A DNA stretch of 64,000 nt, from assembly GCF_040938485.1 (NCBI RefSeq), contig NW_027270912.1:682001-746000 (forward strand). Reading direction: 5' to 3'. This stretch comes from Diadema antillarum. Its lineage: Eukaryota. Each line of letters starts with the position of its first letter. Positions within the stretch are counted from its first letter, which is position 1. Below the pieces are notes generated by a model. It had not been told where the DNA came from, ran no database searches, and was given only the letters and a program-made list of their open reading frames with translations. This document shows positions 8,468 to 31,787 of the stretch, one piece after another. The translations under genes were made by a program, and so were the position numbers.

Positions 8468-8732
8468 AAAAAAAAACATATATATATATAATGTCAGTAT
8501 ACTTTAAATGGTGTGATTTCAATGCACTCCAGTTTAATGTACAGTGTTATAATGAAATTCTCATTACAACAACTAAATTTCAGGTCCTAAAATTATTGCC
8601 TTACATATACTTGTATACTTTATTGTTAGGCTATAATGAACTGTTGACATAACAAATGAAAACTGCTGGTCCCAAAGACTTTGTCATAATGACAGTCACC
8701 CGTACTGCATTTCACTGCCATTGCTTCCTTAC

Positions 8733-8897
8733 CTTTGAGAATACCTGGTGACCCTCCTTCTCTACACATCTCAACATGTGGACCATGGTCAGATAGGAAG
8801 ATAGCCAGTGTGTTGTTGTCTAAACCAGCCTCCCTGACTGTTGCAAGGGTTTCCCCGACTGCCCAGGCCATTTCGTTCAATGAGTCACCATAGCGAC
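8733..8897 (-). CDS. ARS: Arylsulfatase exon 6
   Basis: 165 nt. Encodes RYGDSLNEMAWAVGE...NTLAIFLSDHGPH...GILKG, including the SDHG metal-site motif. Confidence 0.95.
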
Positions 8898-9808: not shown

Positions 9809-10031
9809 CTCTTTTGGATGTCCCGCTAAACCAGGGGCTGCTGAACATGTCGGTGTGGAGCTGCGGGAAGGAGAAGTAGAAGAAGAAGGGCTCTTCCCGA
9901 TGGTTGTGGATGAAGGCCTTGGCATCGTCCACCAGTCTCCTGGTCAGGTCGTGGTGCCTGACCGGCTGCTGGACGATGGAGTCATTGTAGTAGAGCAGGC
10001 AGTAGTATCTGTCCGGTGCCGACATGTATAG
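9809..10031 (-). CDS. ARS: Arylsulfatase exon 5
   Basis: 223 nt, acceptor preceded by a C19 tract. Encodes LYMSAPDRYYCLLYYND...EPFFFYFSFPQLHTDMF...SKR. Confidence 0.92.
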
Positions 10032-10935
10032 CTGTGGGGGGGGGGGGGGGGGGGAGACAAACATAGAATTAGCCAGTTTGGGGTTCCACTATGCACATGA
10101 GCAGAAAAAGGTCATTTGAACTAACAGGGCATCTTGGTATCTAAATTCACTGCATATGTGATGTAATGTTTATTCAGGTAATCCTTATAAATGGTACTTG
10201 CAAGCACATCCACCTGACAGCAAAAGTAGAATTTGGCAGTACCAACTGAAAAAGACTGCTAATACACTCAGTACCGGTACAAAATAATGAAATGGGTGCT
10301 TTCAAAAGTATTAATTGATGGTCTATCCTGGTCAACTGGTCGACACAAGTTCAGCCTTTGTTTGAACATGACTGATGAATTAATAAATTGTTACGTTGGA
10401 CAAGCCTTAACATTATGTCGCATTGCAAACAAGTGAAGTGTCCAACCAAATGAAAAAAAAAGAAGTAAGGTTATTTGTTCCCCTGTGCACATGAGCTATC
10501 TGCAAACCGACTTTAAAAAAAGAACATAACCAAAATTAGTTTTGGCAAGGTTTTTTTAATGCTTGGTTGTGATGCTTTGTAGCATATTCATCAAAAGCAC
10601 TGCGGCATCACAATAAGAGTGCGTGGCATGATGTATCAAGTCTCACAACTTCTAGTTAAGTTTCAAAACCTGCATTCATACCCATGGACAAGGATGCCTT
10701 ATCTCAACTGTGCATTTCTCCCTCTTTGTCATTTATGATGGGGATATCACACATGCTTTCAACTTGATGTTTGTGTCAAGGAGCTTTAAGATGGACATGG
10801 GGTGGTGAAAAGTGTGTGCAGGTGCGAGTCAGAGACTACAAATTCTTAAGAGGCTGGACATATCACATGTTTCAAAATTACCTCATAAGATATCTATCTT
10901 TTCTTTTCTTCTTATCACAGATGAAATTTGTTCAC

Positions 10936-11048
10936 CTTGGTCTCATCACATGTCCAGTGATTGGTGAAGGGCATGAGGTGACCCACGAAGTCAAAGCCGT
11001 GGTGGTGAGGTAGATGGTTGCCATCATCGCATTTGAATTCGTTTATTC
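10936..11048 (-). CDS. ARS: Arylsulfatase exon 4
   Basis: 113 nt, phases match both neighbours. Encodes INEFKCDDGNHLPHHHGFDFVGHLMPFTNHWTCDETK. Confidence 0.92.
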
Positions 11049-11214
11049 CTGTTACATACCAAGGGTTGACACCAAAATCTTCATGAAATTGCAATTTGTG
11101 ACATACTTTGCTTGAGTAATTCCATTTTTCCCCCTACTGGTGATTTCGACTGATATTTCCTTGCCTTTAGTTTTCTACACTGATCCAAATCCCAGATGTG
11201 TTATTTCTATGGCC

Positions 11215-11282
11215 TAATGATAATGATAATGATAATGAATAACATTTATATAGCGCTTAATACTGATGTTTCTAAGCGCATC
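11215..11282 (-). repeat. 3' tail of an L2-type LINE or SINE
   Basis: Minus strand reads GCGCTTAG...AAGCGCTATATAAATG followed by (ATC/ATT)n. Confidence 0.5.
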
Positions 11283-11946
11283 AATCCGGGGGGAAAAAAT
11301 ATATATATATTACGTAAAAATAAAATACTCCTACTCCACATTGTCTTTAAATATCAAGCAGATCATTACAGTTTACCTTCTTGATCAGTCACAACCTCCT
11401 CACTCTTCTTCTCTATTTCACAACTTTCTTCCCACCAAATCAAAATCCATCACACAATTATCTGATCACCTCCCATTCTCTGCTTCCCCTCACTTTTATG
11501 GCTACTGCCAATAATTACTCAATGCCAATTCAAATATGAATAAAATATGATAAAATCCAGTGACACACTGGACCCAGCTTGCACCGAGTACTGCATGCAA
11601 CCACTGAATATTCATGATGGTGAAATTATGCACCTCAGACAATAGCAAGCACAGAAGAAAGAGGGGAGGAGGGTCACCACACTTTAACTCCAAATCTATT
11701 GACTAATTATTGGGGGATCACCTCAGAATTTAAGCTCCTTCAATAAACAAGGAAACAGATAGGATTTAATGAAAGTATAGAAGACATATAACTTAGTATG
11801 TCTTCACAAAATTGTGCCACCTCTTAGATTTGTTGATCAATAACTTGAATTGCCTGAAATAGAAAAGTCAGCAATGCCACAGGAATTCACTTGTGTTTCT
11901 CTCTGTTAAAGCCATTGTCATTTGTCTGTTTGCCTTCAATACTTAC

Positions 11947-12096
11947 CAAGATGCCACTTGCCCACTATCCCAGTGCTGTATCCCACATCCCTCAGCATCT
12001 CGGCTATGGTAATTTCTGACTTGGGCAGGCCACGGCTGCTGGTCATCTCAAACACTCTCACTGGCCCATGAAGGCCGACACGGACAGGTAGCCGCC
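11947..12096 (-). CDS. ARS: Arylsulfatase exon 3
   Basis: CAG acceptor and GTAAGT donor, 150 nt. Encodes RLPVRVG...[28 protein letters not shown] (sulfatase signature 2). Confidence 0.95.
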
Positions 12097-12583
12097 CTGC
12101 AGATTTATGCAGACTAAAGTGGATAAGTACATAAAGTGTAGCTCCAAGGTCCTTTATATTGTTTCCTCTTTCATACTGAAATATGTCTTTTCTCGACTTG
12201 ATTTACCCCTACAGTCCCACCTCTCTTATCTGGCCTCCCTTTATTCGGATCTCTCTGTGATCTCGCCATTATCTTTTTTTTTTTTTATCTCATAATTATG
12301 GAGAAAAGGGGGATTCCAAACTCAAACAAAATTCCTACACAAACTTTGACAGTTTTAAAGGAAATTTGACAGTTCATAGGATTGTACAGGGCCTTTGTAA
12401 TACAGCAATGCCTAGAGAATGCAACCTGCATCCTACCTGGAAAAAATGAAATATTGTATCAGGTTTACTGGCATGCTTGTTGCCACGTGGTAATCAGACA
12501 GACATCAAAACTTTGAAGCACCTTATACATCTACACAAAAATGGAAATATTACATTGAAACAAATTTATACAAAGTAAAGCAC

Positions 12584-12723
12584 CTGTTAACATGGCTCCC
12601 CTGCTTGGACTGCACAGGACATCTGGGCTATACCATCGGCTAAATTTCATTCCCTCACTGGCCATCTGGTCAATGGGGCCATGCTCTTGGCTTGGGTGAC
12701 CGTATAAAGCTAGATCACCATAT
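12584..12723 (-). CDS. ARS: Arylsulfatase exon 2 (formylglycine motif)
   Basis: AG/GT bounded, 140 nt. Encodes YGDLALYGHPSQEHGPIDQMASEG...LCSPSRGAMLTG, the CxPxR signature. Confidence 0.95.
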
Positions 12724-13430
12724 CTAAAAAGACAGTTGACAATTACATCTGTTACAATGACAGAGCAGATCACCTCAAAATCAAAGCAAGATGTCCTAAG
12801 CCATAACACACTTCTTTTGTCAACAGCATGTGTGCAATAATGCACATTGTGAAATGGTTTGAACGTTGATTACATTGGCTGTTCTTTATACTTATGATTT
12901 AAACAGATTAATAGCCTTCTGTTCTACGGGTCAATTACTCCTTTGGGGGGCAATTGTGTAAGTGTGTAACTCCTCTTATGTACACTTTGTTGCACATGAT
13001 AAAACTTGACAACATGAGCAGCATAATAGACAAGAAGCACATATTTGCATACATTAGTAAACATACAGTGTAAGTTCAATTTTGCAAAGAAAAGAAAGAA
13101 AAACAAAACATAACATAACAAAACAAAACAAAACAAAACAAAAGAAAACATACAATAAAGGTATAAACATACTGGTATTTTGCATTGGTACTGTAGTTTG
13201 TTCTTTCACTACGAATGTAAGCGAAATGAATCTACTTCATTGTGAGAACATTTACAGCACGATAGTTTTTGTCTATTCAAAGCGAGAGAGGTGTCTTGAA
13301 ATATCAGAATGTCACACATTGACTAAGAAACAAGGGAAAACTTTGAAGATTCCTTCAGTTTTATAACCCTTCTTACTCAGCATGATGACTAAGTACAAGA
13401 GAGAGAGAAAGACGAAGGCAGAAATTTTAC

Positions 13431-13561
13431 CCCATGTCATCTGCAACGAAAAGGATGACATTAGGTCTGTCATGTGGGTCTCTTGTCAGAGCCAGGCAGT
13501 AATTTCCAAGTAGGAGAACAAAAGATGCAACTGCTATGATGCCACTGCTCATCACTGCCAT
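13431..13561 (-). CDS. ARS: Arylsulfatase (sea-urchin ARS-like), coding exon 1 of 7
   Basis: ATG at 13561 gives MAVMSSGIIAVASFVLLLGNYCLALTRDPHDRPNVILFVADDMG: a signal-peptide-like segment plus the sulfatase PNxxxxxADDxG motif. GT donor, phase 2. An AG acceptor with a T-rich tract at about 13576 suggests an upstream non-coding exon. Confidence 0.9.
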
Positions 13562-13580
13562 CTTGCTTCATGACACTGTC

Positions 13581-13612
<32 letters not shown>

Positions 13613-14233
13613 GAAGAAGAAGAAATTATTAAACAGGGGGAAAAGCTATTGCCACATGTGTATCGGTACCTACAGAAAATAGGATGGTTTTTGTTCACAA
13701 ACATACAGTCTAATGTATAGGGCCAGATGCACAGAAATTCATTATCCTTTTCTACTCAATAAAATGTGTTAAAATCAATATGCCTACCATGCAAACACTA
13801 CTAAAGATATAGTGCACCCTATCACCAAAAGGGAGGGCTAATATCACATAAATTACAAAAGTAGGCAATTCAATCTGCGTGTTTTGAAAATGCCTGTATT
13901 TGGTAATTATCCCTTTTTTGGTATAAATACCGAAGAAACATATTTGAACAAAATGCAAAGTTTATTGAAGTTTGCTCAAAGTGAAGTGATTTGGCAACAC
14001 CATGACTTCTGTCATGAGATGCACTGTGTGGGGTTGTACATGATGTGCTGTACAAATTGTATCAAAGTGCACATGATGTAGAAATCTAAAACGGTGCATA
14101 TAGTAGATATACTACCATCTAACGCTGCACACTGGCACTGGTCTGACAGTCCAGGACCAGTAAAAGCCACTGTTGGCCCAGTAACTTTTTCAGGAATGGA
14201 ACAGTCAAAAATCTGAAAAATTGGGTACCTTCT

Positions 14234-14392
14234 GGGCCCCATTTCATAAAAAGTTGAAATGATAACAACTCTTGCTGGAATGGAAATTGTCATAGTAACG
14301 AAAAGAATCTAGCTTCCTGATTGGCTGTTTCTATGGGAAGTTGCCATTCCAGCAAGAGTTGTCATCCTAACATCTTTTATGAAATGGGGCCC
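14234..14392. mobile_element. PIF/Harbinger-like MITE
   Basis: TIR GGGCCCCATTTCATAAAA/TTTTATGAAATGGGGCCC, an internal inverted repeat ACAACTCTTGCTGGAATGG, and an internal ATTGG. Confidence 0.75.
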
Positions 14393-15893
14393 TCGTCTGA
14401 CAGATAGGTTGGACCAGCAGAAAAAATTGGCTAGTGTACAGCCCTGTACTATCAGATGACAAAACACTGTCCCCTAAATGATGAACTGATTAAAAGGACA
14501 TAACTTGGTCTCTAAAACAGCCTACACCATGATAGATGAGGTCAACCCACCATTCTTTGAACTGGATGCCTTCAAATCAGTGCTCTCTAGTTTAAATAAG
14601 TCCAAGGGCAAGGGAATGATTTACAATGCTTCAACCCATACAAACCAAATTTAAATTACCCTTTTGTGCCTTGAGAAGTACCCACCTTTCTATAGATTAT
14701 TTCTCACTACTTATAGCAGTCTCACCAATAACAGTTTGTGTAAGTGTACTCTTCTGAGGTTTTTGACACAGCACATCCCAATATGGATAAAGATTCATTT
14801 AGAATAAAAAGAAAAAGGCAGTTTCATTGACTTTGACTTTGTGTGAAAGCAAATATACCATGCATCGTATCAATAGTCACAATACCACTGACCATCGCCA
14901 CATTGCATTTTATATTGGGATATAGTCTGTCTCTAGTCTAGGTCTGTCTAGACTAGGTCTAGTAGGCTAGGTTGAATAACTAAACACAGCAGTACTGTCT
15001 CTATACAACACTGTTCGCTGTTCCACGCCGTGCTTTGCACAGCGTGGCGTCTGGTCGGGCTGCATCAGGCATAGGCATCCCCACAAAACAACTTTATAAT
15101 AAAAATTAATTTTATACAAGGTAACCCACTAGCCACAGTTCAGTACAGAATAATCTATATATGGGACTGACATATTAGCAAGCACGTCTTTCGCGAGTTC
15201 GGTGCGTGCATTATTACTGCAGTTGCTCACAACAATTAATCATTCAATCAATGCAAATTCGTCGAAAACAGCGCATAGCAATCATTTCACTTCATGAGCA
15301 TGAAATTGACAGAGAATTAATATCAACCTTATCGTTACGTTCCCCGTTGTGATTGCATAACCAAGCTCTGCCGATCTCGATCTGTACCTCGTATCTCTTT
15401 TCTATATGAACTCTGTTTACATTCCTAGACGTATCAAAAGTCGAATGCAATATTTTATACCATAGTTTACAAATTAAATTGCATAATTGTGCAAAAATAT
15501 ATTGCATTGACTTTTTAATATCTGTTTTTTAATTATAATTAGTAGATTAAATTCATGTCATGTAATGATTTTGATATCATTAGGTAAAATTATTTTTGCC
15601 GTGACTGAAAAAAGTCTAGCCATCGATCTCTGCCCCAGCGAGTCGACACGAGCGATCGTGAACGATTACAAATGACAACGATCCATGTCCTCCACAATCC
15701 GAGCAAGTCGTATCAGTACGCGCAAAACGGTGTGCAAGTTTATTGGATCCAGACGCGATCCCGACACAAGACAACAGGAGTGATCGTAAGATCGTATGCG
15801 ATGAGTCATGTCATCATGGCGACCTACGTGGAAGTAACGGACACGATCAAGTGCCAACCCACGGCGCCCAGTCACTCAGTTTCGAACGGAAAG

Positions 15894-16874
15894 ATGGAGA
15901 AAAAGGACAAGATTCCTGAGGCACTCGTCAAACGTCATGAAGCAAGGTTAGCAAGACTGGAAAAACAGAAGGAGGAACGCGAAAATTCTACTGTCAAAAC
16001 GGAGAGTGCCGAGTTCTTCAGCAAGACATTCAACGCAGAGAAGGCTGTGATCGAGGAGCGCTTGGCAACTGCAGAGAACGTGGATAAGTCCAGTTTGAAC
16101 GATTTCTTTGACGATTTGACAGAGTTGGCACAGAAATTACAGAAGTATGTGACAGACACCTCTCCTTTCCTACCTTCCTACGATATACGCAATTCCCAAG
16201 AACAGTTATCAAAGCTGATAAAAGATATCAATGAAAAGAGAGATGTGTTGATGCCAAAGAAGAAGTTTGCATTCAAGGCGAGAAAGAGGGGAGAAGAGCA
16301 AACGATTCAACTGCCGAGGAAGATTGGAACGGATGATGTCGATGCTGCGAAACCGCTGAATGTGATGACGGCTAATGCCTGCGGATTCTCCAATCGCACC
16401 GCTGAGACGCTATGTCTTAATGCAGAGGAAATGCACGCGAAGGATGTCGGTCTCTCCAACCTCACTTCCTGCGTCGTCAAGTTGCAGGGCTGTCCCAGTG
16501 CTCTGCACATCAGCAACATCACCGACTGCAAGATCTTCTGCGGGCCCATCCCAGGTTCGGTGTTTGTCGACAGGTGTCTCAACAGCACACTGGTTCTCGC
16601 CTGCCAACAGCTGCGGGTGCACAACACGAGCGACACAAGGTTTTACATCCATGTTACGAGCAGAGCCATCATCGAGGATACCTTCACGGTGTCGTTTGCG
16701 CCTTTCAACTGGAAGTACGATGGCCTAGAGCAGGACTATGAGCGCAGTGGTCTTGACAGAAGTAAAAATGCTTGGAATGACATCGACGATTTCAACTGGT
16801 TGGCGCATAACAAGCGCTCGCCCCATTGGGACCTGATTCCAGAGGCAGACAGAGTACAGAAATGGGACTGGTAG
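15894..16874 (+). CDS. TBCC: Tubulin-specific chaperone C, intronless, 326 aa
   Basis: N-terminal helical domain ending KKKFAFK, then a C-CAP/cofactor-C domain GSVFVDRC...LACQQLRVH (arginine finger)...TSRAIIED...FAPFNW...WNDIDDFNWL. The ATG is in good context (AAGATGG). Confidence 0.96.
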   Translation: MEKKDKIPEALVKRHEARLARLEKQKEERENSTVKTESAEFFSKTFNAEKAVIEERLATAENVDKSSLNDFFDDLTELAQKLQKYVTDTSPFLPSYDIRNSQEQLSKLIKDINEKRDVLMPKKKFAFKARKRGEEQTIQLPRKIGTDDVDAAKPLNVMTANACGFSNRTAETLCLNAEEMHAKDVGLSNLTSCVVKLQGCPSALHISNITDCKIFCGPIPGSVFVDRCLNSTLVLACQQLRVHNTSDTRFYIHVTSRAIIEDTFTVSFAPFNWKYDGLEQDYERSGLDRSKNAWNDIDDFNWLAHNKRSPHWDLIPEADRVQKWDW

Positions 16875-19492
16875 TGCTCACGTTTGATTGTTATATTGAC
16901 TACAGTTTTTGCATGTTGGTCAAACAGTTCCTTTCATATTGCAAATCAGCGATGACAGTACAAATTGTGTGACATCAGAGAAAAGTAGCTCTATCATTTG
17001 TTATAACTACATGTGAGATAAAACAATCTCTGCTCTTGGCAAAACCATGAGTGTGAAAAGGTCTCAACATGGCATGAGCAGCATTTTCAGTCAATAATGA
17101 TAATCTACACAAATTCAGCATTTATTGTAAGATGACACAGTCTATAATGCCATGTGGTAGCTAATGCATGTAGCATTCCACCAATGATCAGAATTAAGTC
17201 AGTCAGCTTCGGCAGTTGTTTCTTGGATTACAATTTCTGATTAACGTCTTTCAGGCTTCGTCAATTGCATACCAGAGAGTTGTAAAGTAGATGAGAAATT
17301 GCAAAAGCTGAGTTTCATACAAGAAGCATAGTATCCCCTCCATTCACTTTTTGCCGAACACACAAGACAAAAATTACTATGTTTACCAATGTATCTATAT
17401 TGCAATCAATTTCTTGGTATCCTGGTTTAAAGCTTGTAGTGAACATTCATTTTGTTCAACAGAAAAAAGCCACATGAAGGTAAAAAAAGTGTAGAATGCT
17501 GAATGGTGACACTGTAACAAGTCTCTCTCCAATACATGCATAGCAAGGGAACTTTGATTTAGTGTTTAAGAAAGTGCATGATGTTCATGGATTCGCCTTG
17601 TTTGTTGTAAAGTGTATGCCTGTTTAGCATCTTTTGCCTTCTTGTAAACAGATGGTCATTTACCATATTATTAACTTGGCTGTAATTGCATGAGAGGTAT
17701 ACCATTTGGCACTGTATATGAGTACATTGTACACTGTAGTAACCAGAATAGACCGACTACTGATAGTATTCAAATTCATGGATATTTATGGTCCTTTATA
17801 CCTGGCCAAGAGTTCATGATACTGTGAAATTCTTTAAATTCTACCTCTTATGGTTTAATTATTTTGCAGCATTCACAAAACTAGTAACACCATTATTTTT
17901 TGTGAAGGATGTTGGCCTGCATGACGATGGTCTTTCGAATGAGCTCGCCTTCTATGAGTAAGGAACTTATTGACATGTCTCAGTTTCACACAAGAAGTAC
18001 AAGTTTGTACTTTCAACATAGTAACATCAGTAGTTATTGCAGTATGCCATGTTATCTACATTATACATCTTCCTCATGAATGCATACAGTGTGTATGGAA
18101 TTTCCATCATTGATTATCATATGAGAAGACAGAATTTTCAGGGTTTTAGGCAACATGGAAGTGACGAAGATGATGTGTTCAAACAAAATAATGATACCAG
18201 GTACACTGTACATGCTTACATTGTACAGACCATGAACCATCAACACTTCACTTCGGAAAGTATACACCGTATGGTTATGTATGCTGTATATTGTGTGTAT
18301 GTTCAGTTTAGGTGTTCTAGAATTTTTTCCCTTAGCAGTTGCCCTTTGCAAGTGTGTATACCTACTCCTCGTCATTGTGTGAATGTAATGGAGTGTATAC
18401 AGAAATCTTATAGCGCACGAACATACATACAGGTACTCCCCATAAAATGGTAAATGTTCTGGAATTGTCCAAATCAATTTTTAATGTGGTATGATGCAAA
18501 TGCAACGACAATCCATATTTGTGTATATAGTCGTGGGATCATCTGCAATGTTGATACATCTTTTAATTGGTTAAAAATTGATTATTGTTTGATTTGAATT
18601 TGCTCATTCTGTTATCTCTTCTCTATGCCCATTTCCTTTATGATAATTACACTTCAATAATAGTACTACAGAACAAAACAATTGTGTACATACATATGTA
18701 CACATTGCTTGCAGAGCTGCAATGCCATTATAACTGAGGTATACATTGATGTGATGTCACAGTAGAGGAAGCCCTTGTGATATTTGTAAGACTTCTCATC
18801 CATTTCCATGAGTGAAGCTAGCAGCTGGTCATTTCCCATTTGTAATTATGAAAAATAAATGAAAAAATGTTTCTTCTCCATGTACATTACACTGTCTTGC
18901 TGGGCACAAGCACATGCCAACATTTGTCACTTGCAAGTTGTGGTTGTACTTACCATACTTTGGTGTAAAAAAAGATGTGATTCATCAATATTATCATCGT
19001 GTATCTGAATAAAAGTTGAAAAAATCAATATGGTGTTCATTATTTGCATATAGGAGTGTACACAAGGTTGTGTTACTTTGATTGTGTATGGGTTTGATTG
19101 CATTGTGACAGAGGTCAAACTTCAAAATGAAAACAAATGTAGACCTCACGACATACAATGTACATGTTCAAAGTAGGCCTATTCTTTATGACTGATTGAA
19201 CAGTGGGTGGGTGTACTATAATGTATTTCAATAAAGCTTTCCCCCTAAATAAAGCAGTATGCATAATGAGTGGGGTTTGTTACATAATAATTGTATAGAT
19301 TGTATTCTTCAGAGTGTGAAGTTAACATGTTGAAAGAGAACACTTGAAATGCTCCCCTTCCCCCCACAGAAGACAATGTTTTCCCTTCTTTGTTCCTCAT
19401 AATTCTCTTCTCTTTCTTCATTGGTATCATGATATTAGCCAAGTTATGCAACTAGACATGGTTATAAATACACACACAAAGATACAAACATA

Positions 19493-19925
19493 TTGATCTA
19501 TCTATCTACCTATCTATCCATCCATCCATGCATCTATCTATCTATCTACCTATCTCTCTATCGATCGATCTATATTGATCTATCTATCTATGTTATCTAT
19601 CATATCCATCTTTATATAGGGTCCTAGCTATTGATACATCATTTATATATATGTACAGTTAACAAGATTATTCATACCCCTAGAAAATTTTTAGTTTTGA
19701 GCAGATACCTTACAAGTAAAGGAAGGAGTGATGGTGATTGGGTGTTATATCTCAACTTTTCTATTGTTATGCAAATGAGGTGAAACAGGAATTCATGTCA
19801 TTTTATAGAGGACAAATAAGAGTAAAAAGTAAACACCAAATCACCATCACTCCATCCTACATTTGTAAGAAATCTGTTCAAAACTAATTATTTCTCAGGG
19901 GTATGGATAATTTTGTTGTTAGCTG

Positions 19926-20001
<76 letters not shown>
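19493..20001. repeat. (TATC)n at about 19493-19610 and (TG)n at about 19929-20001 flanking the MITE
   Basis: Simple repeats read directly from the sequence. Confidence 0.9.
19656..19925. mobile_element. Tc1/mariner-like MITE
   Basis: TA|CAGTTAACAA...TTGTTAGCTG|TA with long imperfect inverted arms (GGAGTGATGGTGATT / AATCACCATCACTCC). Confidence 0.75.
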
Positions 20002-21012
20002 ATGAATAGTATTGTTCACAGCTCAGATTATTTTCAAAGGAGTTATCAAGCTGAAAGTACTGACATAACGAAAATAAAACATTTGATATATCATGGAACT
20101 TAATATATTTCTTTTTTTAAAAACAATCTTGAAAGAAGAAAAAAAAATGGGGACTATAAGAATATACCTTTCCTTAAGTAACCTGATGGCCTGGTAAAAC
20201 TTGATTTCCTCTTTCCAAGACTCGCTAAAGCGGAGGTTCTGAATTGTGATTTCTTAAGAGCTTGTCCACCCCCATCCCCACACAAAATGGATGACAGTAA
20301 TAATTGTATCTAAACATTTCTAGACAATGATCAAAGACGTTTGGAGAGCTCGTTGCGGGGTTATTGCGGAAGGGGACGTCATTCATGAAACTTGGCCAAG
20401 TCATTGAAGAATGAGAAAGCAAGTGATTTTCAAATTTCACAGCTATTTTTCAGAACTTCCCCTGAAATCGTAACCATTTTTTGTTGTTGTTAATGAAATG
20501 TAAAAGAAATTGTTTCCTTGGTATCAAAGTATGAATTGATTCTATGGTGTTTTTTTTTTTTTTTTTTTGTTCTTTGCAATGATTGCTCTTAAAAGAAGGA
20601 AGTGGCAGTCGCTTAGTTATCAACTGCAAACATGATTTGAAGGTGATAAATTAAGCATACAGAAACACAAATAATGCCTAGCCATCAATCAGATTCACGT
20701 GGTGTCATAGCAACTGGAATTAGACTATTTGCGGCGTTAACGTCGTCTCAGACGATTAGGGCGACGTCATTTTTTTGGTCTTCGGCTGACATTCTTTGAG
20801 CTTAACTCTTATTTAACACTCCTGTCATCCGGTTATCTCTTTTTGAAACTGTACCACATGCCTCCTAATATGTCTTCGCGGATTCAGCAGGCAATGATTA
20901 CAACACTTGAACTGACCATGCTGAAAATGGAAATCTTCGGTGACCAATGATACATGTATTCCTCTTTCTACCCCCTCCACCCACCACCCCCCCCCCAAAA
21001 AAAAAAAGAGAA

Positions 21013-21609
21013 CTAGAGATCCATGAAGTCCATCAACACTTTTTCATCGTTCATCCAGAAAACACGGGGCGAACGCTCACTCATCGGTTCAGTCACCGCG
21101 TCATTCTCGACAACTTCTCCAACTGAGTAAGTTCCACCAGCGCCCTCTTCGGTCGTTAGACTTGAAACTCTTTCAGGTGAAGACATATCCATCATATCCG
21201 TCTCTGGATCCTGGCTGATGTCCCAGAAATCAGGGGTCTGTAAATGACGCTTTTTTGCTTCTTTTACGGTTCGACGTTCTGCAGAGGAGCGGGTTCCAGA
21301 TACTTGTTCTCGTGTCGTCGACGAGTCCGACGTCGCAAGGTGTTGGTGGTCATCGAAGCCTTCGTTGAGGGGCCTGTGGGGATGAACGCGGGGTGTGGAC
21401 GGTGCGAAAACTGGCGCCATAATAACATCACCGTCTCCCGCTGATCTACCCGCAGCCGAGTCCCCGGAATGATCGTCTGAAAGTGACATGTTGGACGTCG
21501 ATGCGTCTTCTGCGGCAATGAATTTGTCTGCCGAGATGAAGTCATCGTCGAAGGCTTCGACGCCGGCACGTTTGGTGGAGTGTCGTGTTCGACCGACCAC
21601 AGCACCCAT
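21013..21609 (-). CDS. Orphan 198-aa ORF, acidic and Ser-rich, probably disordered
   Basis: About 600-nt open frame with clearly raised GC and CpG against an AT-rich background. ATG context is GTGATGG and there is a possible acceptor upstream. No recognisable domain. Confidence 0.4.
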   Translation of the reverse strand: MGAVVGRTRHSTKRAGVEAFDDDFISADKFIAAEDASTSNMSLSDDHSGDSAAGRSAGDGDVIMAPVFAPSTPRVHPHRPLNEGFDDHQHLATSDSSTTREQVSGTRSSAERRTVKEAKKRHLQTPDFWDISQDPETDMMDMSSPERVSSLTTEEGAGGTYSVGEVVENDAVTEPMSERSPRVFWMNDEKVLMDFMDL

Positions 21610-22645
21610 CACGGCTGGTCCACCTCGTCAGATAAGGGAATCTCGTCTTAAATCGATGAGAATGACATGCAAATTTACATCAGATTAAAATGGGAAGAAG
21701 ATCTTTGTTTTCCATGATGCAAAGCAACCAATTTGATTTAAAAATGACGTATAAGAGAGAAAAACAGTGATAATGCGGACGTTACTGTATAAGAAAACAG
21801 TATTGATTTCTTTCATGTAAATAATGTGCAAGATTATAACGATTTTAAGTGTATATTGCCACGAAATTAATGTTCAAGTTAACGTGAATAGATAAAAGAA
21901 TAAATCAAGCAAAACAACCAAACCAAGCCGCGTGTTGTGAAGTGATGACACACTCTATTACCATGACCATGATGACATTGATCAATATCACTTTTATTAA
22001 TCAAAACATATGAAAGTTTAATATCCGATAACTCCCTCATTTTAGGTCCCATCATGGATACGAGAAATCATTCAATGCCTTCCTTGTGAACAAATTATTT
22101 GTAACAAAGAATAATCTACTACGTTCTCTCTTTTTTTTTTCTTCAGAATAAAAACTTTGCAACCTCAGCTGTTTGGTGACGTAGGCCCCTTACACAGCTC
22201 ATGAGCAATCATAACATTGTATACTAATGACTTCGTTTAGCGCCTTAGGTGTAGTTTTATAGGTCCCCTATCTCTATGCACATAACAAAGTCGTGAAAAA
22301 CAAACGACCAGTATATCAGATATGATACCAGATATGACTGACGAATCGGTTTGAAAAATAACTGTAACAAAAATAACACGGGAAATGGCTCATACTGGTA
22401 CTGTTTGTTTGTTTGTTTGCTTTTATTTCTGCATTCAATCAGATGCAATTTGAATGCAAACTTCAAAAAGTACAAAGACAAAGAATAACAAGTGCAGTGA
22501 AATAAATCGATAACAGTACATAAATAGATACACACAGGTGATTGCATTGAGCAATGTATAGATACACAGAAACATAAAATAGCAGCATACAGTATTTTTC
22601 AGTAAACAACAGAGATCATTGAATGCAGGAGACCACCATCATACA

Positions 22646-23970
22646 AGCTGGTATCTCACTGAGCGGCGAACGTTTGCGAACGTAGCGAATTTGAGATTCG
22701 CCAACTTTTCTGACGAATGTTTGCGAAAAATCAAAGTTCGCTTCTGCCATTAGCGACAGTTAGCGACTTTTAGCGATGTTTAGCGACAATTAGCAACACT
22801 TTAGCGAATGTTTGCGAAAGTGTTTGCGAACACAGGTGGCGACTATTAGCGAATGTTAGCAAATGTTAGCGACAATTTTGCAAACGTTAGCGACAATTTT
22901 GCAAATGTTAGCGACAGTTTTGCAAATATTAGCAACTGTTTGCAAATCCTTTGCGACAATTTTGCGAATGTTCTTGGACCTAGAAAAGAACCAGGCGATT
23001 GTGTATAGTAAGACCCATAAAACGACATAAAACCTTCCACTGAATTCAGATCTCTTGTGACAACCGTTCAAGATGGATTTCCAGGATATGGAAATAAATT
23101 TCTGCCAAGAAGAGGCTCAAGGTGTTGCTATCCTTGAAGAGCTGCTTTGTCAGGCTGCTGCTACAGCTATTCTCTCTAAAAAAGAAGAGTGAAAATGTTC
23201 ACTCTTGAAGAAGTGAATAACAGAAAAGAGTGAGTTTCAAGTGAAATTAGAGTGATTTAGGACTGAAAATGTTCATTTTCACTCATTTTGGAGTGACTTC
23301 AGGGATCACTCCAAGATTTTCGAGTGATCCCTGAGGTCACTCCAAAATGAGTGAAAATAGATATTTTCACTCAAAATTCACTCCAATTTCACTCAAAACT
23401 CACTCTTTTCTGTAATTCACTCCTTCAAGAGTGAACATTTTCACTCTTTCTTTTTTAGAGAGTTGTGCAGCATAAGAGAAATAAAATAAAGAAAAACAAG
23501 AAAGGAAGAAGAAAAGAAAGAGAGTCAGAGAGTGCTTGTTGCAGAGGACAGACTTAAGTCAATATGAAAAGCTTTTGAAGCAATTACAATCATGATGGAG
23601 ATGTCAAGAGCTTCAAGAACTTTCTTAGAGAGGAACCTTGTCTGTTTCAGAAGCTTTTATATAGGAACCATGTGGTTACTTGTTCGCTAGCAGTGGCGAA
23701 TCCTATAAAAACGTTAGCGACACCGTATTACGACCGTTTGCGAATTCTTACGAGTGTTTTGCGAATGTTTGCGAATGTTTGCAACTGTTAGCGAAAATAC
23801 AAATTCGCAAAGGTTCGCAAAGAAATTTTGAACAGCGACAAGAAAAACTGTTTGCGACAATAAAAACCGTTTGCGAACGTTGACGAACCTTTTGCAACCG
23901 TTTACGAACCCTGGCGAATTCCCAAATTCGCTACGTTCGCAAACGTTCGCCGCTCAGTGAGATACCAGCT
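22646..23970 (+). mobile_element. Internally deleted PIF/Harbinger element carrying a 5' transposase remnant
   Basis: About 47-bp near-perfect TIR AGCTGGTATCTCACTGAGCGGCGAACGTTTGCGAACGTAGCGAATTT, plus subterminal TTAGCGA/TTTGCGA arrays. The broken ORF 23073-23665 contains VRECLLQR...QYEKLLKQL...DVKSFKNFLREEPCLFQKLLYR, resembling Harbinger transposase N-termini. Confidence 0.75.
23172..23462. mobile_element. Near-palindromic MITE (291 bp) nested in the Harbinger remnant, 2-bp TT duplication
   Basis: CTCTCTAAAAAAG...CTTTTTTAGAGAG arms pair over most of their length. TT sits at 23170-23171 and 23463-23464. Confidence 0.85.
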
Positions 23971-24145
23971 GAAGCGATTAAGCTTGAAATAGATGGAGGC
24001 CTCTAATGACTATTCAACGACATAACTCTCTTGGAGGAAGGTGATTAGGTGAGTGCAGTGCAGTTGCAGGTGAGTGTGCAAGATACAGTTGAAGGAAGAA
24101 AATAGAGATTGACAATAAGATGACAATCTATACCATAAATATTTG

Positions 24146-24605
24146 TTAGCTCAATTGATTTGGATAATATGATTGTATCAAATATCGTTTTAGTGAAGCT
24201 TTCAAAGAATAAATACTTGAACAAGACTTTATATTATCCGGGAGATTATTCCAAATGTCCGGACCCGAATGTCTTATAGATTTATGTGTCACTAATAATA
24301 TGGGATTCAAAAGGTGGAAATTTCTACATATACGAGTAGGGTACGAATGGACAGAAGTTTTGAACCTAAACATGTTATCAAACGATGATGGAAGTTGATC
24401 ATGTATATATTTAAACATAATTACTGCTACTTGAATAATATTCAAATAAAAAACCTTCAATGTTTTAAGCTTATGTAATAAAGAAAATGCCAGAAAATGC
24501 GATCCTGTACAAATACGTATAACTTTCTTTTGTAATTTGAATATAGAATTTATTTTGGTAGAGCCGCAAGTACCCAATACAACATTGCAATAACTTATAT
24601 ATGGG
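24146..24605 (-). mobile_element. 3' fragment of a CR1/L2-group (Crack-like) LINE ORF2
   Basis: PYISYCNVVLGTCGSTKINSIFKLQKKVIRICT...HSYPTR...WNNLP, closely similar to the C-terminus of the LINE at 48-50 kb. Confidence 0.85.
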
Positions 24606-25397
24606 AGAATTAAGGAATTATATAATAGAAATAAAGTTGAACGAGGAAGAAAGAACTTCAGCTTGGAAATTATCCCTATATTTCTAGAAATACATACTGT
24701 GGTGAGACCCTATCCTGGGGATGAAGAGATCATTGTTTATCAACCTATCATAATAGTCCACTGATTTTATGTCTTTATATAGTATAGTTCTTACCTTCCA
24801 GCATGATCGTGATCATCATCACCAACATCCTCATCACTAGCACCGCCACTACAACAATCGGAACAGCGAGATATTTTGTTACCCTTGGCAAAAAGATGAT
24901 GCAAAGATAGCACATGTATTGCTACATTTGTACTTAAACTATTTAGGAAAAACTGTACTGAACGTATACCTACCAACAAACTTCGGGGTATATGCGCTGA
25001 GGAAATATTCAGATGAGTCAGACTCAAATTGAACTCTTGATAGAAATGAGAAAATCTTCAACAAATAGCCTGGGGAAGTCAGCACTGCACTGCCAAAGAA
25101 GAAGTAGATGACTGTGCAAAGAGATTTTATATAATCTCTGTGTTGATACCAATAGCGCACGCTTTGGGGTCTTTGGATGCACGATTGTAAATCACTGCGT
25201 TGAATCTTGCATTATACGCGAGAATCTTATGCGCCATGACGCGCTACTTTACTCACACAAACAACGAACTCAAACTGCTTTATTGTATGCTCGGGACTGT
25301 AGAACGATCAAATTATTACGTTCAGAGCGTGCCAAATGACCTAACTTTGAAGCCTTTTTGGTATTTTATCAATAGTATATCCCAAGTCGTCACCTTT

Positions 25398-25975
25398 ATG
25401 CCGAAGCAGGCTGTTTTACCATGCCGGGTGACCGAGGAGTGTCGACAGCGTCTCAGCTCCTTCCTCATCGTCCTGCTCGCTCTCGGTGTCCTCGGAGGCG
25501 TGGCGCTCATAGGTCTTGCTCTCTACATACGAATTCGTATTCGATCGAAGGCCAGTCTCATCGAGGGCTATGACTTCGACCAGCTGCCCATCACCCTTCT
25601 CAGCGTAGGCGGCGTGACAGTGCTGTTCGACTTGATCGCCGCCAAGATCGCTTCCGACATATCGGACTCGTCGCGCAGGGAGAAACTGCGCTACGTCATG
25701 CTCGGAATGGTGGTCAGCCTATCCCTGGCCGACACCGGACTCCTCGTCGGTGGCTGCATGGCCTTCATCCAGCGTAGTCTCCTCACCAAGTCGCTCAACA
25801 ACGGACTCATCACGGCCATGAGGGAGTATAAGAATGACATCAAACTGAAAGTAGAGATGGACCTTGTCCAGATGGAATTTGGATGCTGCGGTAATAACGG
25901 CTACGAAGATTGGTTTGAGATTCAATGGATCAGTGACAACTACCTCAACAGACAGAGCATGGGTAGAATTGGGAG
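25398..25975 (+). CDS. PRPH2: Peripherin-2/ROM1-like tetraspanin A, exon 1 (start uncertain)
   Basis: TM1-TM3 and DLVQMEFGCCGNNGYEDWFEIQWIS (compare PRPH2 CCGNNGFRDWF). Donor AG|GT at 25975, phase 2. The start is either the ATG at 25398 or an upstream exon joined through CAG at about 25409. Confidence 0.85.
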
Positions 25976-26506
25976 GTGGGAGAGATTTCTTTTTATACAC
26001 AGAATTTCATTTTTTTTTTTAAATGAAGATTTTTCATCTCTTATGGAAGTCCCTAGAGCCTATAGCCATTCGATAGCAAGAAGAAGACTCCCAAAAACCG
26101 TAGAAAGTGCAAACGTCAGAAATTATTGACAGCAAAATAATATCAAATAATTATGTCAATACTTGCATGTCAGATCAGGCAAAATATAAAACCATTTTTC
26201 AAGAGTCACGAGTTGTTTCATACTTGCCCCCTTTTCAAATTTGAAAGGGAGAAATTCATTTCAAATGACTGTGATAATTAGACTCCTGATTAAACTTAAA
26301 AAGAGTAGTTGTATCTTCTTGTCGAGTATCTCCTAAATTCCTCTTCAATGTCATTGATGTATGGGTTGCGATGGCAAATGCAGTGGCCTTGATAAGAAAC
26401 TGTATAGAACAGAGACCACTAATGCTGTTGAACATGAAGTATTGCAAATCTGGATGTCGATCATTCAAACATGTTTCGTGTTAACTCTTTCTTTGTCTCA
26501 TTATAG

Positions 26507-26741
26507 AGACATGGAATCTGGCGAATTCACGAATGACGACACCCCGTTTTCCTGCTGCCATCCGAGGTCGGTGAGACCCTGCATCCACCATAACGTGCAC
26601 GACAACGCCGCCCACTACCGGTACGACTACGAGTTGAGCTACACGATCCACCGCACGGGATGCAAGCAGAGGCTGATGGAGTACTACAACGCGAGGCTCA
26701 GTAACATCGGGTCCGGCGTCATGGGCTTGTTTTCTCTCCAG
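26507..26741 (+). CDS. PRPH2: Peripherin-like A, exon 2
   Basis: TAG acceptor, CAG|GT donor, 235 nt, phases 2 and 0. Encodes DDTPFSCCHPRSVRPC...HRTGC. Confidence 0.92.
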
Positions 26742-27483
26742 GTTCGCTTGCTTTCTCCCCACCCCCTCCCCTCCCCCTCCCTTCTCATCTCTCTTAGCGC
26801 ATAGTTTCCTCTTGAATAATGATAATAGATAATAACAATAGTGGCCACTTGTATAAGGAAATTAACGTAATTGGAGTCCTCATTGGCCATGAAATTCCAT
26901 CTGAACTTGCCTACTTTTATTTTGCATTGGAGCAAGCAACATCAAAGTCAGAACCAGCCTGTACTGCATTACTATAATATTATATTACTTTGGACAAATA
27001 TTTCATGAATGACTTTTCAGTCATTCCTTTGGTCGTGCAAAGTTACCAACGTAATTCATGGAGGCACAATGTTTCACAGGAATAACATTAATTAGCAATC
27101 TATTGTATGTTCTGCATAGTGGCGTATAAGTGAATACCATTTGTTTTTAAAGCTCCAATTATATAGCTGACAATTTCTACTGGGAGCAGATACTTGATGT
27201 GGACAACCTTTCTTTTTGCCATTATCATTAAAACAAAATATTGCTAAGAATCGAAAAATCATTCATTCATCATTGCCACGTCAAATCGGCATCAACCCAA
27301 CAAAAGCACGAATACAATTTAAAAAATAAAAAAGCCCAATAATAAACAAGCAAACAAACATACAAAAACACAAAGCTATCTTTCTGTTTATTGTCGATCG
27401 GCACTGGGTCCTATAAAAAGGTGATTAAAGCAAAGATTTTGACGATTTGATGTCACTGATTTACTTTATTTCTATGTATCTAG

Positions 27484-27633
27484 TTTATCGCGCTCCTGTC
27501 AGCCCAGTACCTCAACTCGTCGATCTGCAATGCCTTGGATCGAGGCGATCCGGAGCGAACTGCCAAGGGGTGGATATTTGAAGAGTGCCCTCTTATTACT
27601 CTCTTCAAAGCCATCGCGGGGAATTTCGTTTAG
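27484..27633 (+). CDS. PRPH2: Peripherin-like A, exon 3 (terminal, short tail)
   Basis: TAG acceptor. Encodes FIALLSAQYLNSSICNALDRGDPERTAKGWIFEECPLITLFKAIAGNFV*, homologous to the PRPH2 YLQTS...GWL tail start. Confidence 0.85.
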   Translation, partial: FIALLSAQYLNSSICNALDRGDPERTAKGWIFEECPLITLFKAIAGNFV

Positions 27634-29938: not shown

Positions 29939-30501
29939 ATGTTTTTGGCCTGTGACCTGAGTGAGGGTTGTCGTCAAACTCTCGCCATCGTTCTCCTGAT
30001 GATACACATCATCTGCTTCTTTTGCAGCGCCGCTCTATGTGCTGTTGGGTTTTTTCTCCGTGTCAGTCTCGCGGCCAAGGTCAACCTCATCGAGGGCTAC
30101 GATGGCGACGTTCTGCCCGTCGTCCTCATGGCCGTGGGCGGATTCACGGGTCTCACCAACCTCGTCGGAAGCAGAATGGCTTTCGACATCGGCAAACCGC
30201 TGCGCAGGAAACGACTGCGGTGTCTGCTGGTCGCCCTCCTCGTTCTCCTGCTCGTTGTCAAAATCGCCCTGCTCACAGCGGGCATCATGTGCTTCGCCCA
30301 TCGCCGTCATCTGGCAAAGTCTTTCCACAACGGACTCATCAAAGCCATGGAAAAGTTTCAGAACGACCACAAAATCCGGTATGACATCCACAAGCTCCAG
30401 ATGGATTTCCGATGTTGCGGTAACGGCGGCTACGAAGACTGGTTTGACATACAGTGGGTCAGCAACGACTTCCTGGATCTTCAAAACCCAAACATTCAGA
30501 G
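29939..30501 (+). CDS. PRPH2: Peripherin-2/ROM1-like tetraspanin B, exon 1
   Basis: MFLACDLSEGCRQTLA..., TM1-TM3, LQMDFRCCGNGGYEDWFDIQWVS. Donor AG|GTAAGT, phase 2. Confidence 0.92.
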
Positions 30502-31552: not shown

Positions 31553-31787
31553 CAAGATGACGAGTGGACAGTATCTCAACGATGACGTCCCATTCTCATG
31601 CTGTCGGCCATCGTCGTCGAGGCCATGCGTCCACCACTTCGTGCACGATAATGACATCCACTACCGGTACGACTACGGCATCGACCTGACTCTCCATCGG
31701 ACGGGATGCAAGACCAGCCTCATGGAGTACTTCGGATCGCGACTCGCCAGCATGGGCGCGGTCACCATGGCATTGCTTGGGTTACAG
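31553..31787 (+). CDS. PRPH2: Peripherin-like B, exon 2
   Basis: Long pyrimidine tract plus CAG, 235 nt as in copy A. Encodes DDVPFSCCRPSSSRPC...HRTGC. Donor CAG|GTACGT. Confidence 0.93.

What the first reader, a model, noticed from the sequence alone, without database searches (positions are those of the whole stretch)
15894..27633. TBCC directly upstream of a PRPH2-like gene on the same strand, matching the human 6p21.1 arrangement
Seen: intronless TBCC (+) is followed about 8.5 kb later by 3-exon peripherin-like genes (+) with intron phases 2 and 0. Recalled from memory and needing verification: human TBCC is single-exon and is the protein-coding neighbour upstream of PRPH2 on the same strand, and PRPH2 has three exons with phase-2 and phase-0 introns. 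Inference: this microsynteny predates the echinoderm-chordate split. It would support orthology and may reflect shared ciliary or microtubule-linked regulation.
Basis: partly seen in the sequence, partly recalled or inferred. Interest (0 to 1): 0.75.

Follow-up and report, generated by a model that had tools for sequence, protein, structure and literature searches.

The report
Ancient TBCC–peripherin gene neighbourhood in urchin
In this Diadema sea urchin a tubulin-folding gene (TBCC) sits just upstream of two relatives of the eye-disease gene peripherin-2, on the same strand as in sharks and fish, so this neighbourhood is most simply read as inherited from the common ancestor of urchins and vertebrates: a solid but fairly ordinary case of conserved gene order.

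Summary
TBCC is a single coding exon, but it most likely starts at 15816, not 15894. There are two tandem 3-exon peripherin/ROM1-family genes on the + strand (25398-27633 and 29939-35669), both with intron phases 2 and 0. A small Diadema-only ORF on the minus strand (21013-21612), annotated as a gene in D. setosum, lies between TBCC and the first peripherin-like gene.

The core interpretation is supported. TBCC(+) followed by a PRPH2-family gene(+) within 2-8.5 kb also occurs in a sea cucumber, an acorn worm, amphioxus, elephant shark and a stickleback. Cattle have the order UBR2-PRPH2-TBCC-BICRAL. No link was seen within 10 kb in a starfish, a crinoid, Lytechinus or four protostomes.

The phase-2 intron falls in the same alignment column in urchin, acorn worm, shark and fish, and the phase-0 intron also in Lingula. 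Sequence, fold and tree place the urchin genes with PRPH2/ROM1.

A sulfatase gene lying head-to-head with TBCC extends the block in invertebrate deuterostomes.

Shared regulation is untested. I found no conserved non-coding DNA and no excess of OTX/CRX sites.

Peripherin orthologues in invertebrate deuterostomes were already published.

The parts
549..13561 (-). Arylsulfatase-like gene (GALNS/STS/ARSA type), many exons, lying head-to-head with TBCC. First coding exon 13427-13561, with a signal peptide and the motif PNVILFVADDMG. The active-site CSPSR exon is within 12531-12845. The last coding exon is within 549-1382. A retroelement (about 1500-7250) sits in one intron.
   Evidence: ORFs. PDB hits to GALNS 9e-25, steryl-sulfatase 1e-24 and ARSA 4e-20. 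Exon-by-exon blastn matches to the sulfatase genes next to TBCC in Lytechinus, Apostichopus, Saccoglossus and Branchiostoma.
13562..15815 (.). Divergent 2.25-kb spacer between the sulfatase ATG and the TBCC ATG. Presumed promoter region for both genes.
   Evidence: Coordinates. The promoter function is inferred, not shown.
15816..16874 (+). TBCC (tubulin-specific chaperone C): a single coding exon of 352 aa plus stop.
   Evidence: 98% identical to D. antillarum TBCC from residue 1. (the Lytechinus start aligns at 15813-15845).
16875..25397 (.). 8,523-bp spacer between TBCC and peripherin-like gene 1. It holds microsatellites and minisatellites, a LINE tail fragment and the orphan ORF.
   Evidence: No blastn match to the equivalent spacers of other species.
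21013..21612 (-). Small ORF (198-199 aa, predicted start MGAVV at 21609) seen only in Diadema. No Pfam family. Probably a lineage-restricted gene between TBCC and gene 1.
   Evidence: (single hit: D. setosum 'uncharacterized protein', P0300). (86% identity, in-frame indels, both ends nearly identical). (absent from all other loci).
24146..24577 (-). Fragment of a LINE 3' ORF, showing that transposon insertion is tolerated in the spacer.
   Evidence: 44% identical to the ORF tail next to the RT-like ORF at 48030-49791 (ORFs).
25398..25975 (+). Peripherin-like gene 1, exon 1 (578 nt). The following intron is phase 2.
   Evidence: PDB best hit PRPH2, 6e-24.
26507..26741 (+). Peripherin-like gene 1, exon 2 (235 nt). 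The following intron is phase 0.
   Evidence: Pfam Tetraspanin.
27484..27633 (+). Peripherin-like gene 1, exon 3 (150 nt including the stop). The whole product is 320 aa.
29939..30501 (+). Peripherin-like gene 2, exon 1 (563 nt). The following intron is phase 2.
   Evidence: PDB best hit PRPH2, 3.5e-20.
31553..31787 (+). Peripherin-like gene 2, exon 2 (235 nt). The following intron is phase 0.
34596..35669 (+). Peripherin-like gene 2, exon 3 (1074 nt). It encodes a long low-complexity tail with four EPIYANI-type tyrosine motifs. The whole product is 623 aa, 98% identical to a D. antillarum protein of the same length.
Evidence: P0123.

Best explanation
The window, from a Diadema sea urchin, carries a gene block most simply explained as inherited from the last common deuterostome ancestor: arylsulfatase (-), then head-to-head a single-exon TBCC (+), then on the same strand a peripherin/ROM1-family tetraspanin.

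In echinoids the tetraspanin was duplicated in tandem (genes 1 and 2). A Diadema-only ORF has appeared in the spacer. The urchin tetraspanins are co-orthologues (pro-orthologues) of vertebrate PRPH2, ROM1 and RDS2.

Shown:
- Gene identities, exon structures and intron phases.
- The same order and orientation in sea cucumber, acorn worm, amphioxus, shark and teleost.

Inferred:
- Each gene has its own promoter, and TBCC and the sulfatase share a divergent promoter region.
- TBCC acts as the tubulin-folding GAP cofactor.
- The tetraspanins shape curved ciliary or flagellar membranes, but without the vertebrate Cys150 disulfide link.

Why the pair stayed together is not settled. I put about 60% on passive inheritance, meaning a short spacer in slowly rearranging genomes and no obligate coupling. 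I put about 30-35% on a cis-regulatory constraint.
For: Identity of the genes:
- TBCC.
- Peripherin family: PRPH2 8e-48 and ROM1 1e-32 against 2.5e-8 for the next tetraspanin, using the 97%-identical D. setosum orthologue, and exon by exon.
- The AlphaFold model (pLDDT 86.8) matches PRPH2 chain 7zw1_A at TM 0.82. The next-best tetraspanin reaches 0.56 (uroplakin) and Tspan15 only 0.32.
- Six EC2 cysteines are invariant across 25 family members.

Gene structure:
- The phase-2 intron lies in the same alignment column in both urchin genes, Saccoglossus, Callorhinchus and Pungitius.
- The phase-0 intron lies in the same column in those species and in Lingula.

Synteny, measured from the TBCC stop to the PRPH2-family ATG on the same strand:
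- Diadema 8.5 kb
- Apostichopus 7.2 kb
- Saccoglossus 5.1 kb
- B. floridae 3.7 kb
- Callorhinchus 4.7 kb
- Pungitius 2.1 kb
- Cattle gene order

The sulfatase lies just upstream of TBCC on the opposite strand in Diadema, Lytechinus, Apostichopus and Saccoglossus. In B. floridae it is about 13 kb upstream of the TBCC coding exon, with other called genes between.

Tree:
- Genes 1 and 2 are sisters (99/96).
- Vertebrates group with ambulacrarians, weakly (63/79).
- A single deuterostome clade is not rejected (p-AU 0.49).
Against: - No PRPH2-family sequence lies within 10 kb downstream of TBCC in Asterias, Antedon or Lytechinus. The block is therefore not universal in echinoderms, and its loss must be assumed in two or three lineages.
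- No link appears in Mya, Lineus, Liolophura or Lingula. The block cannot be pushed back to the bilaterian ancestor.
- The family tree is poorly resolved at depth and has no tetraspanin outgroup.
- Amphioxus is not placed with the other deuterostomes in the free tree.
- The 10-kb flank limit means that 'absent' may only mean 'further away'.
- The human locus was not examined directly.
Confidence: 0.88

Rival explanations
1. The pair is held together by selection. Either cis-regulatory elements for the peripherin-family gene lie in or around TBCC, or TBCC transcription keeps chromatin open or reads through. A break between the genes would then mis-regulate the tetraspanin in ciliated or flagellated cells.
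For: - Orientation is identical in all six lineages that keep the pair (and the window). Among published conserved pairs, only 15-25% of those not in 5'-5' orientation keep their orientation everywhere (PMC3514665).
- The pair outlasted the rest of the neighbourhood. The upstream sulfatase was replaced by BICRAL in vertebrates.
- Spacers are short, 2-8.5 kb.
- Mollusc family members are named 'sperm protein' or are male-gonad specific (PMC5800059). This hints at a ciliary or flagellar setting in which a tubulin cofactor is also needed.
Against: - No link was found within 10 kb in a starfish, a crinoid and Lytechinus, nor in four protostomes.
- The Diadema spacer holds a LINE fragment, satellites and an orphan ORF on the other strand.
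- No non-coding blastn conservation was found between echinoderm spacers.
- OTX/CRX sites are not enriched: 2 observed against 4.3 expected in the proximal 1 kb.
- TBCC is a housekeeping gene and vertebrate PRPH2 is photoreceptor-specific (established knowledge), so plain co-expression is not expected.
Confidence: 0.32
2. The resemblance is not orthology. Either the urchin tetraspanins are an older paralogue line that merely resembles PRPH2, or TBCC and a peripherin-like gene came together independently in different lineages.
For: - The deep branches of the family tree are weak (63/79), and amphioxus floats.
- Protostomes carry two distinct subfamilies, so ancient paralogy does exist in the family.
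Against: - Independent same-strand juxtaposition in five or six lineages is vanishingly unlikely.
- The shared family-specific phase-2 intron falls in the same alignment column.
- PRPH2 and ROM1 are the best sequence and fold matches by a wide margin.
- Deuterostome monophyly is not rejected.
- Huang et al. 2010 already list RDS/peripherin among the tetraspanin lineages with orthologues in invertebrate deuterostomes (PMC2965184).
Confidence: 0.04

Closest known systems
Vertebrate TBCC-PRPH2 locus (human 6p21.1 from memory; here seen in Callorhinchus milii, Pungitius pungitius and the cattle BTA23 gene order)
   Same: - Single-exon TBCC immediately upstream of PRPH2 on the same strand.
- PRPH2 has three coding exons with intron phases 2 and 0, at the same alignment columns as the urchin genes.
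   Different: - The upstream head-to-head neighbour is BICRAL/GLTSCR1L in vertebrates and a sulfatase in the urchin.
- Vertebrates have one PRPH2 at this site; the urchin has two tandem copies.
- The urchin proteins lack the 5-residue insertion that carries Cys150.
- Urchin exon 2 is 235 nt, not 247.
- Diadema has an extra orphan ORF in the spacer.
Conserved ancient microsyntenic pairs (CAMPs) of Irimia et al. 2012, Genome Res (PMC3514665)
   Same: Two phylogenetically unrelated genes kept adjacent across lineages separated for more than 500 million years, with short spacers.
   Different: - Most CAMPs are head-to-head or are developmental-gene/bystander blocks. This pair is co-directional and joins a housekeeping gene to a structural membrane protein.
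- It is seen only in deuterostomes here.
- I could not check whether the pair is in their list, because no supplement is held.
RDS/peripherin tetraspanin lineage in invertebrate deuterostomes (Huang et al. 2010, PMC2965184; Garcia-Espana et al. 2009, PMC2650405)
   Same: - These papers already state that RDS/peripherin has orthologues in invertebrate deuterostomes.
- They also state that RDS/ROM has a derived out-of-frame intron and keeps only ancient intron 6.
- Both points are reproduced here.
   Different: - Neither paper's text mentions TBCC (a search for TBCC with PRPH2 returned only five unrelated papers).
- Huang et al. list no reliable protostome orthologues for the lineage. The search here found many family members in protostomes.

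Membership tests
TBCC (tubulin-specific chaperone C) | TBCC_N helical domain followed by the C-CAP/cofactor C-like beta-helix domain | tested here: met
   Pfam PF16752 1e-31 and PF07986 6.5e-41, both covering their profiles end to end.
TBCC (tubulin-specific chaperone C) | Closer to TBCC proper than to the paralogue RP2 (TBCCD1 has no solved structure and was not compared) | tested here: met
   Human TBCC 1e-80 over residues 6-325; RP2 3.8e-17 over the C-terminal domain only. 681 named TBCC orthologues at E<=1e-10.
TBCC (tubulin-specific chaperone C) | Arginine finger in the QQLR motif (that this residue is catalytic is recalled from memory) | tested here: met
   ACQQLR is conserved in the alignment to human TBCC. 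GAP activity itself was not tested.
Peripherin-2/ROM1 (RDS) tetraspanin subfamily | Tetraspanin fold with four membrane helices and an enlarged EC2 domain | tested here: met
   Pfam PF00335 on exon 1 (8e-13) and exon 2 (6e-6, below the curated cut-off) of gene 1 and on exon 1 of gene 2 (6e-20). AF2 model of the D. setosum orthologue has pLDDT 86.8.
Peripherin-2/ROM1 (RDS) tetraspanin subfamily | Best match to PRPH2/ROM1 rather than any other tetraspanin | tested here: met
   PRPH2 8e-48, ROM1 1e-32, next Tspan15 2.5e-8. Fold TM 0.82 and 0.76 against 0.56 or less for others. NCBI names the relatives peripherin-2-like.
Peripherin-2/ROM1 (RDS) tetraspanin subfamily | Six conserved EC2 cysteines in CCG ... 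PFSCC ... RPC ... GC | tested here: met
   C163, C164, C209, C210, C218 and C245 are invariant in 25 members. All are present in both window genes.
Peripherin-2/ROM1 (RDS) tetraspanin subfamily | Seventh EC2 cysteine (Cys150 of PRPH2), used for disulfide-linked higher oligomers | tested here: not met
   The 5-residue segment carrying it (TPGRC) is a gap in both urchin genes and in Saccoglossus, Lingula and amphioxus. It looks like a vertebrate addition, so this argues against identical oligomer chemistry, not against family membership.
Peripherin-2/ROM1 (RDS) tetraspanin subfamily | Family-specific gene structure: a derived phase-2 intron in EC2 plus the ancient phase-0 intron 6, and no others | tested here: met
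   (same columns). PMC2650405. Human boundaries c.581 and c.828 (PMC9290825).
Peripherin-2/ROM1 (RDS) tetraspanin subfamily | Expression in photoreceptors and location at disc rims | not testable with these tools
Mollusc relatives are reported from sperm or male gonad (PMC5800059), so photoreceptor specificity should not be assumed.
Conserved ancient microsyntenic pair | Unrelated genes adjacent in several deeply separated lineages | tested here: met
   Echinoid, holothurian, hemichordate, cephalochordate, chondrichthyan and teleost, plus the cattle gene order.
Conserved ancient microsyntenic pair | Functional cause (co-regulation or a regulatory block) | tested here: inconclusive
   No conserved non-coding DNA and no OTX/CRX enrichment. 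No expression or chromatin data were available.

The most novel reading that the evidence does not exclude
TBCC and the peripherin-family gene form an old functional unit of ciliated or flagellated cells. In the deuterostome ancestor the tetraspanin was a ciliary or sperm-flagellar membrane-shaping protein, driven by elements shared with or embedded next to the tubulin cofactor gene. Vertebrate photoreceptors later took over this unit for outer-segment discs. The fixed same-strand order over more than 500 million years would then be a regulatory constraint, not inertia.
Probability: 0.15. Interest if true: 0.6.

Novelty: new member of a known kind. Interest (0 to 1): 0.35.

Why it matters
The block gives position-based evidence, independent of weak deep trees, that invertebrate deuterostome 'peripherin-2-like' genes are the true counterparts of the vertebrate disc-rim proteins PRPH2 and ROM1.

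That matters for tracing how the photoreceptor outer segment arose. The ancestral protein lacked the Cys150 link, and relatives in molluscs appear in sperm or testis.

It also adds a clean, co-directional example to the catalogue of very old gene neighbourhoods, with a second conserved head-to-head pair (sulfatase-TBCC) beside it.

The result is not surprising to a comparative genomicist, and it does not by itself show shared regulation.

Tried and rejected
- **Conserved non-coding DNA.** blastn (word size 9) of window 1-36000 against the Lytechinus, Apostichopus, Saccoglossus, Branchiostoma, Asterias and Antedon loci matched coding exons only.
- **OTX/CRX sites.** TAATCC and TAATCY counts in the spacers and in the proximal 1 kb of seven PRPH2-family upstream regions were at or below shuffle expectation.
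- **Protostome extension.** Three TBCC loci (Mya, Lineus, Liolophura) and one peripherin-like locus (Lingula) show no link within 10 kb.
- **Irimia et al. 2012 pair list.** No supplement is held.
- **Outgroup-rooted tetraspanin tree.** This was not possible. The careful tree is therefore unrooted.
- **Bacterial-type promoter and terminator scan** of the divergent spacer. This is irrelevant for a eukaryote and was ignored.
- **Pfam on the spacer ORFs.** Nothing above noise.
- **Joined spliced models.** These were not sent to any search tool. Searches used single exons by reference or the public orthologues P0001 and P0123. Joining was done only inside scripts, to choose splice sites and to build the alignment and the tree.

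Full report
**What is in the window**

The best protein matches are to Diadema antillarum and D. setosum, so the window comes from a Diadema sea urchin:
- TBCC is 98% identical.
- Gene 1 is 310/320 identical.
- Gene 2 is 98% identical.

The long + strand ORF at 15672-16874 contains a complete TBCC. It has Pfam TBCC_N and TBCC. It matches human TBCC at E=1e-80 co-linearly, against 4e-17 for RP2. The annotated D. antillarum protein aligns from the Met at 15816, and the Lytechinus start aligns to the same place. The coding sequence is therefore 15816-16874.

TBCC has a single coding exon here. The same holds in Lytechinus, Apostichopus, Asterias, Antedon, Saccoglossus, Callorhinchus, Pungitius, Mya, Lineus and Liolophura, where the gene range equals the CDS length. 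It is nearly so in amphioxus, where residues 2-346 form one block.

**The peripherin-like genes**

tblastn with the D. setosum protein P0001, followed by a search over GT-AG junctions, gave the two gene models below.

| Gene | Exon 1 | Exon 2 | Exon 3 | Exon lengths (nt) | Intron phases | Product |
|---|---|---|---|---|---|---|
| 1 | 25398-25975 | 26507-26741 | 27484-27633 | 578, 235, 150 | 2 and 0 | 320 aa |
| 2 | 29939-30501 | 31553-31787 | 34596-35669 | 563, 235, 1074 | 2 and 0 | 623 aa |

Gene 2 lies 2.3 kb downstream of gene 1 and has a long low-complexity tail.

The joined models were built only inside scripts. Every search was done exon by exon by reference, or with the public orthologues P0001 and P0123.

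**Are they PRPH2/ROM1 family?**

- Exon 1 of each gene hits bovine PRPH2 best (6e-24 and 3.5e-20), then ROM1, then other tetraspanins at 1e-6 to 1e-8.
- The full-length orthologue P0001 gives PRPH2 8e-48, ROM1 1e-32 and Tspan15 2.5e-8.
- An AlphaFold model of P0001 (pLDDT 86.8) matches PRPH2 chain 7zw1_A at TM 0.82 and ROM1 at 0.76. Uroplakin reaches 0.56 and Tspan15 0.32.
- Six EC2 cysteines (CCG, PFSCC, RPC, GC) are invariant in 25 family members.
- The vertebrate insertion that carries Cys150 is missing in all invertebrate members aligned.

In an alignment of both urchin genes with the Saccoglossus, Callorhinchus and Pungitius genes:
- The phase-2 intron falls in one column.
- The phase-0 intron falls in one column, shared also by Lingula.

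Garcia-Espana et al. [quoted passage not shown] Human boundaries at c.581 and c.828 follow from the variant names in PMC9290825. Pungitius PRPH2 has the same exon lengths, 581 and 247 nt.

**Phylogeny**

A full-library search with P0001 found 250 relatives at E<=1e-10. The named ones come from echinoderms, a hemichordate, amphioxus, vertebrates, molluscs, annelids, nemerteans, a brachiopod, a priapulid, arthropods and tardigrades. The family is therefore bilaterian-wide.

A careful IQ-TREE of 31 sequences shows:
- Genes 1 and 2 are sisters (99/96), with S. purpuratus on the gene 1 side. The duplication is therefore old within echinoids.
- Vertebrates group with ambulacrarians, weakly (63/79).
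- Amphioxus is unresolved.
- One deuterostome clade is not rejected (p-AU 0.49).
- The tree has no outgroup.

**The synteny test**

I looked up TBCC orthologues in public assemblies with 10-kb flanks. TBCC(+) followed by a PRPH2-family gene(+) was found in the species below.

| Species | Distance, TBCC stop to PRPH2-family ATG | Notes |
|---|---|---|
| Apostichopus japonicus | 7.2 kb | |
| Saccoglossus kowalevskii | 5.1 kb | neighbour is P0125 |
| Branchiostoma floridae | 3.7 kb | neighbour is P0155, 'peripherin-2-like' |
| Callorhinchus milii | 4.7 kb | 351-aa PRPH2 |
| Pungitius pungitius | 2.1 kb | 344-aa PRPH2 |

A cattle QTL gene list, apparently in map order, reads UBR2, PRPH2, 5S_rRNA, TBCC, BICRAL (PMC8396740).

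No family member lies within 10 kb of TBCC in Asterias, Antedon, Lytechinus, Mya, Lineus or Liolophura, by annotation and by tblastn. The Lingula family member has no TBCC upstream.

The simplest reading is an ancestral deuterostome arrangement that was lost, or stretched beyond 10 kb, in some echinoderms. There is no evidence for it in protostomes.

**A wider block**

Upstream of TBCC on the other strand lies an arylsulfatase gene.
- In the window its ATG is at 13561, 2.25 kb from the TBCC start.
- A sulfatase holds the same position in Lytechinus, Apostichopus and Saccoglossus.
- In amphioxus it lies about 13 kb upstream of the TBCC coding exon, with other called genes between.
- In the two vertebrates that place is taken by BICRAL/GLTSCR1L.

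**Caveat on 'directly upstream'**

The minus-strand ORF 21013-21612 matches an annotated D. setosum 'uncharacterized protein'.
- Identity is 86%.
- The indels are in frame and both ends are nearly identical.
- It has no Pfam family and no counterpart in the other loci.
- It is probably a young Diadema gene inside the spacer.

The spacer also holds a LINE fragment and satellites.

**Why is the pair kept?**

No data here show coupling.
- The spacers share no detectable non-coding sequence.
- OTX/CRX sites are not enriched.
- Insertions are tolerated.
- Several lineages show no link.

On the other side:
- Orientation is identical in all six lineages that keep the pair. This is uncommon for conserved pairs that are not head-to-head (PMC3514665).
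- The pair outlasted its other neighbours.

I rate passive inheritance at about 60% and regulatory constraint at about 30-35%.

One possible functional thread is worth noting. An abalone family member is named 'sperm protein'. A mussel transcript whose best hit is chicken RDS2 is male-gonad specific (PMC5800059).

**Novelty**

- RDS/peripherin orthologues in invertebrate deuterostomes were reported in 2010 (PMC2965184).
- Hundreds of ancient gene pairs are known (PMC3514665).
- This is a new example of a known kind.

**Limits**

- The N runs at 41278-41411 and 57725-58004 were left untouched.
- No human contig was fetched or compared.
- Human strand orientation and the single-exon state of human TBCC rest on memory plus the non-human vertebrate loci.

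Noticed in passing
window 549-13561 (-) and 13562-15815: An arylsulfatase gene lies head-to-head with TBCC. A sulfatase holds the same position in Lytechinus, Apostichopus and Saccoglossus, and lies about 13 kb upstream in B. floridae, but it is replaced by BICRAL in shark and stickleback. This is a second conserved pair, of the common 5'-5' type.
   Followed up: partly
window 21013-21612 (-): A Diadema-restricted ORF of about 198 aa, starting MGAVV, with a disordered middle and nearly identical ends between species. It is annotated in D. setosum and is probably a young gene in the TBCC-peripherin spacer.
   Followed up: partly
window 34596-35669 (+), motifs near 34836-34973: Gene 2 has a tail of about 340 residues after the tetraspanin core, with four EPIYANI-type tyrosine motifs and long basic and serine-rich stretches. 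Gene 1 has no such tail.
   Followed up: no
alignment; window gene 1 residues about 145-150: The 5-residue segment of vertebrate PRPH2 that carries Cys150 (the intermolecular disulfide) is absent from all invertebrate family members aligned. It may be a vertebrate novelty tied to disc-rim polymers.
   Followed up: partly
P0306 (Haliotis rufescens); PMC5800059 Table 2: An abalone family member is named 'sperm protein'. A freshwater-mussel transcript whose best hit is chicken RDS2 is male-gonad specific. Invertebrate peripherin-like proteins may be sperm or flagellar proteins rather than photoreceptor proteins.
   Followed up: no
L013:10001-13350 (Lingula anatina): The annotated Lingula family member has its first intron 8 alignment columns downstream of the deuterostome position and in phase 0, plus an extra phase-1 intron in the tail. 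This could be intron sliding or a flaw in the gene model.
   Followed up: partly
L001:27227-33506 (Branchiostoma floridae): In the amphioxus TBCC-linked peripherin-2-like gene, the region equivalent to exon 1 is split by three extra phase-0 introns. The phase-2 intron is kept.
   Followed up: partly
window 1758-5540 (+): Retroelement ORFs (gag-like, RT/RNase H-like and tyrosine-recombinase-like) sit inside an intron of the sulfatase gene.
   Followed up: no
window 48030-49791 (+): Two adjacent LINE-like ORFs, one reverse-transcriptase-like and one tail ORF. A diverged copy of the tail lies at 24146-24577 (-).
   Followed up: partly
P0104 and P0150 (Tubulanus polymorphus): Nemertean TBCC and one peripherin-like protein are each reported on a contig of 32,063,560 bp, so they are probably on the same chromosome.
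   Followed up: no
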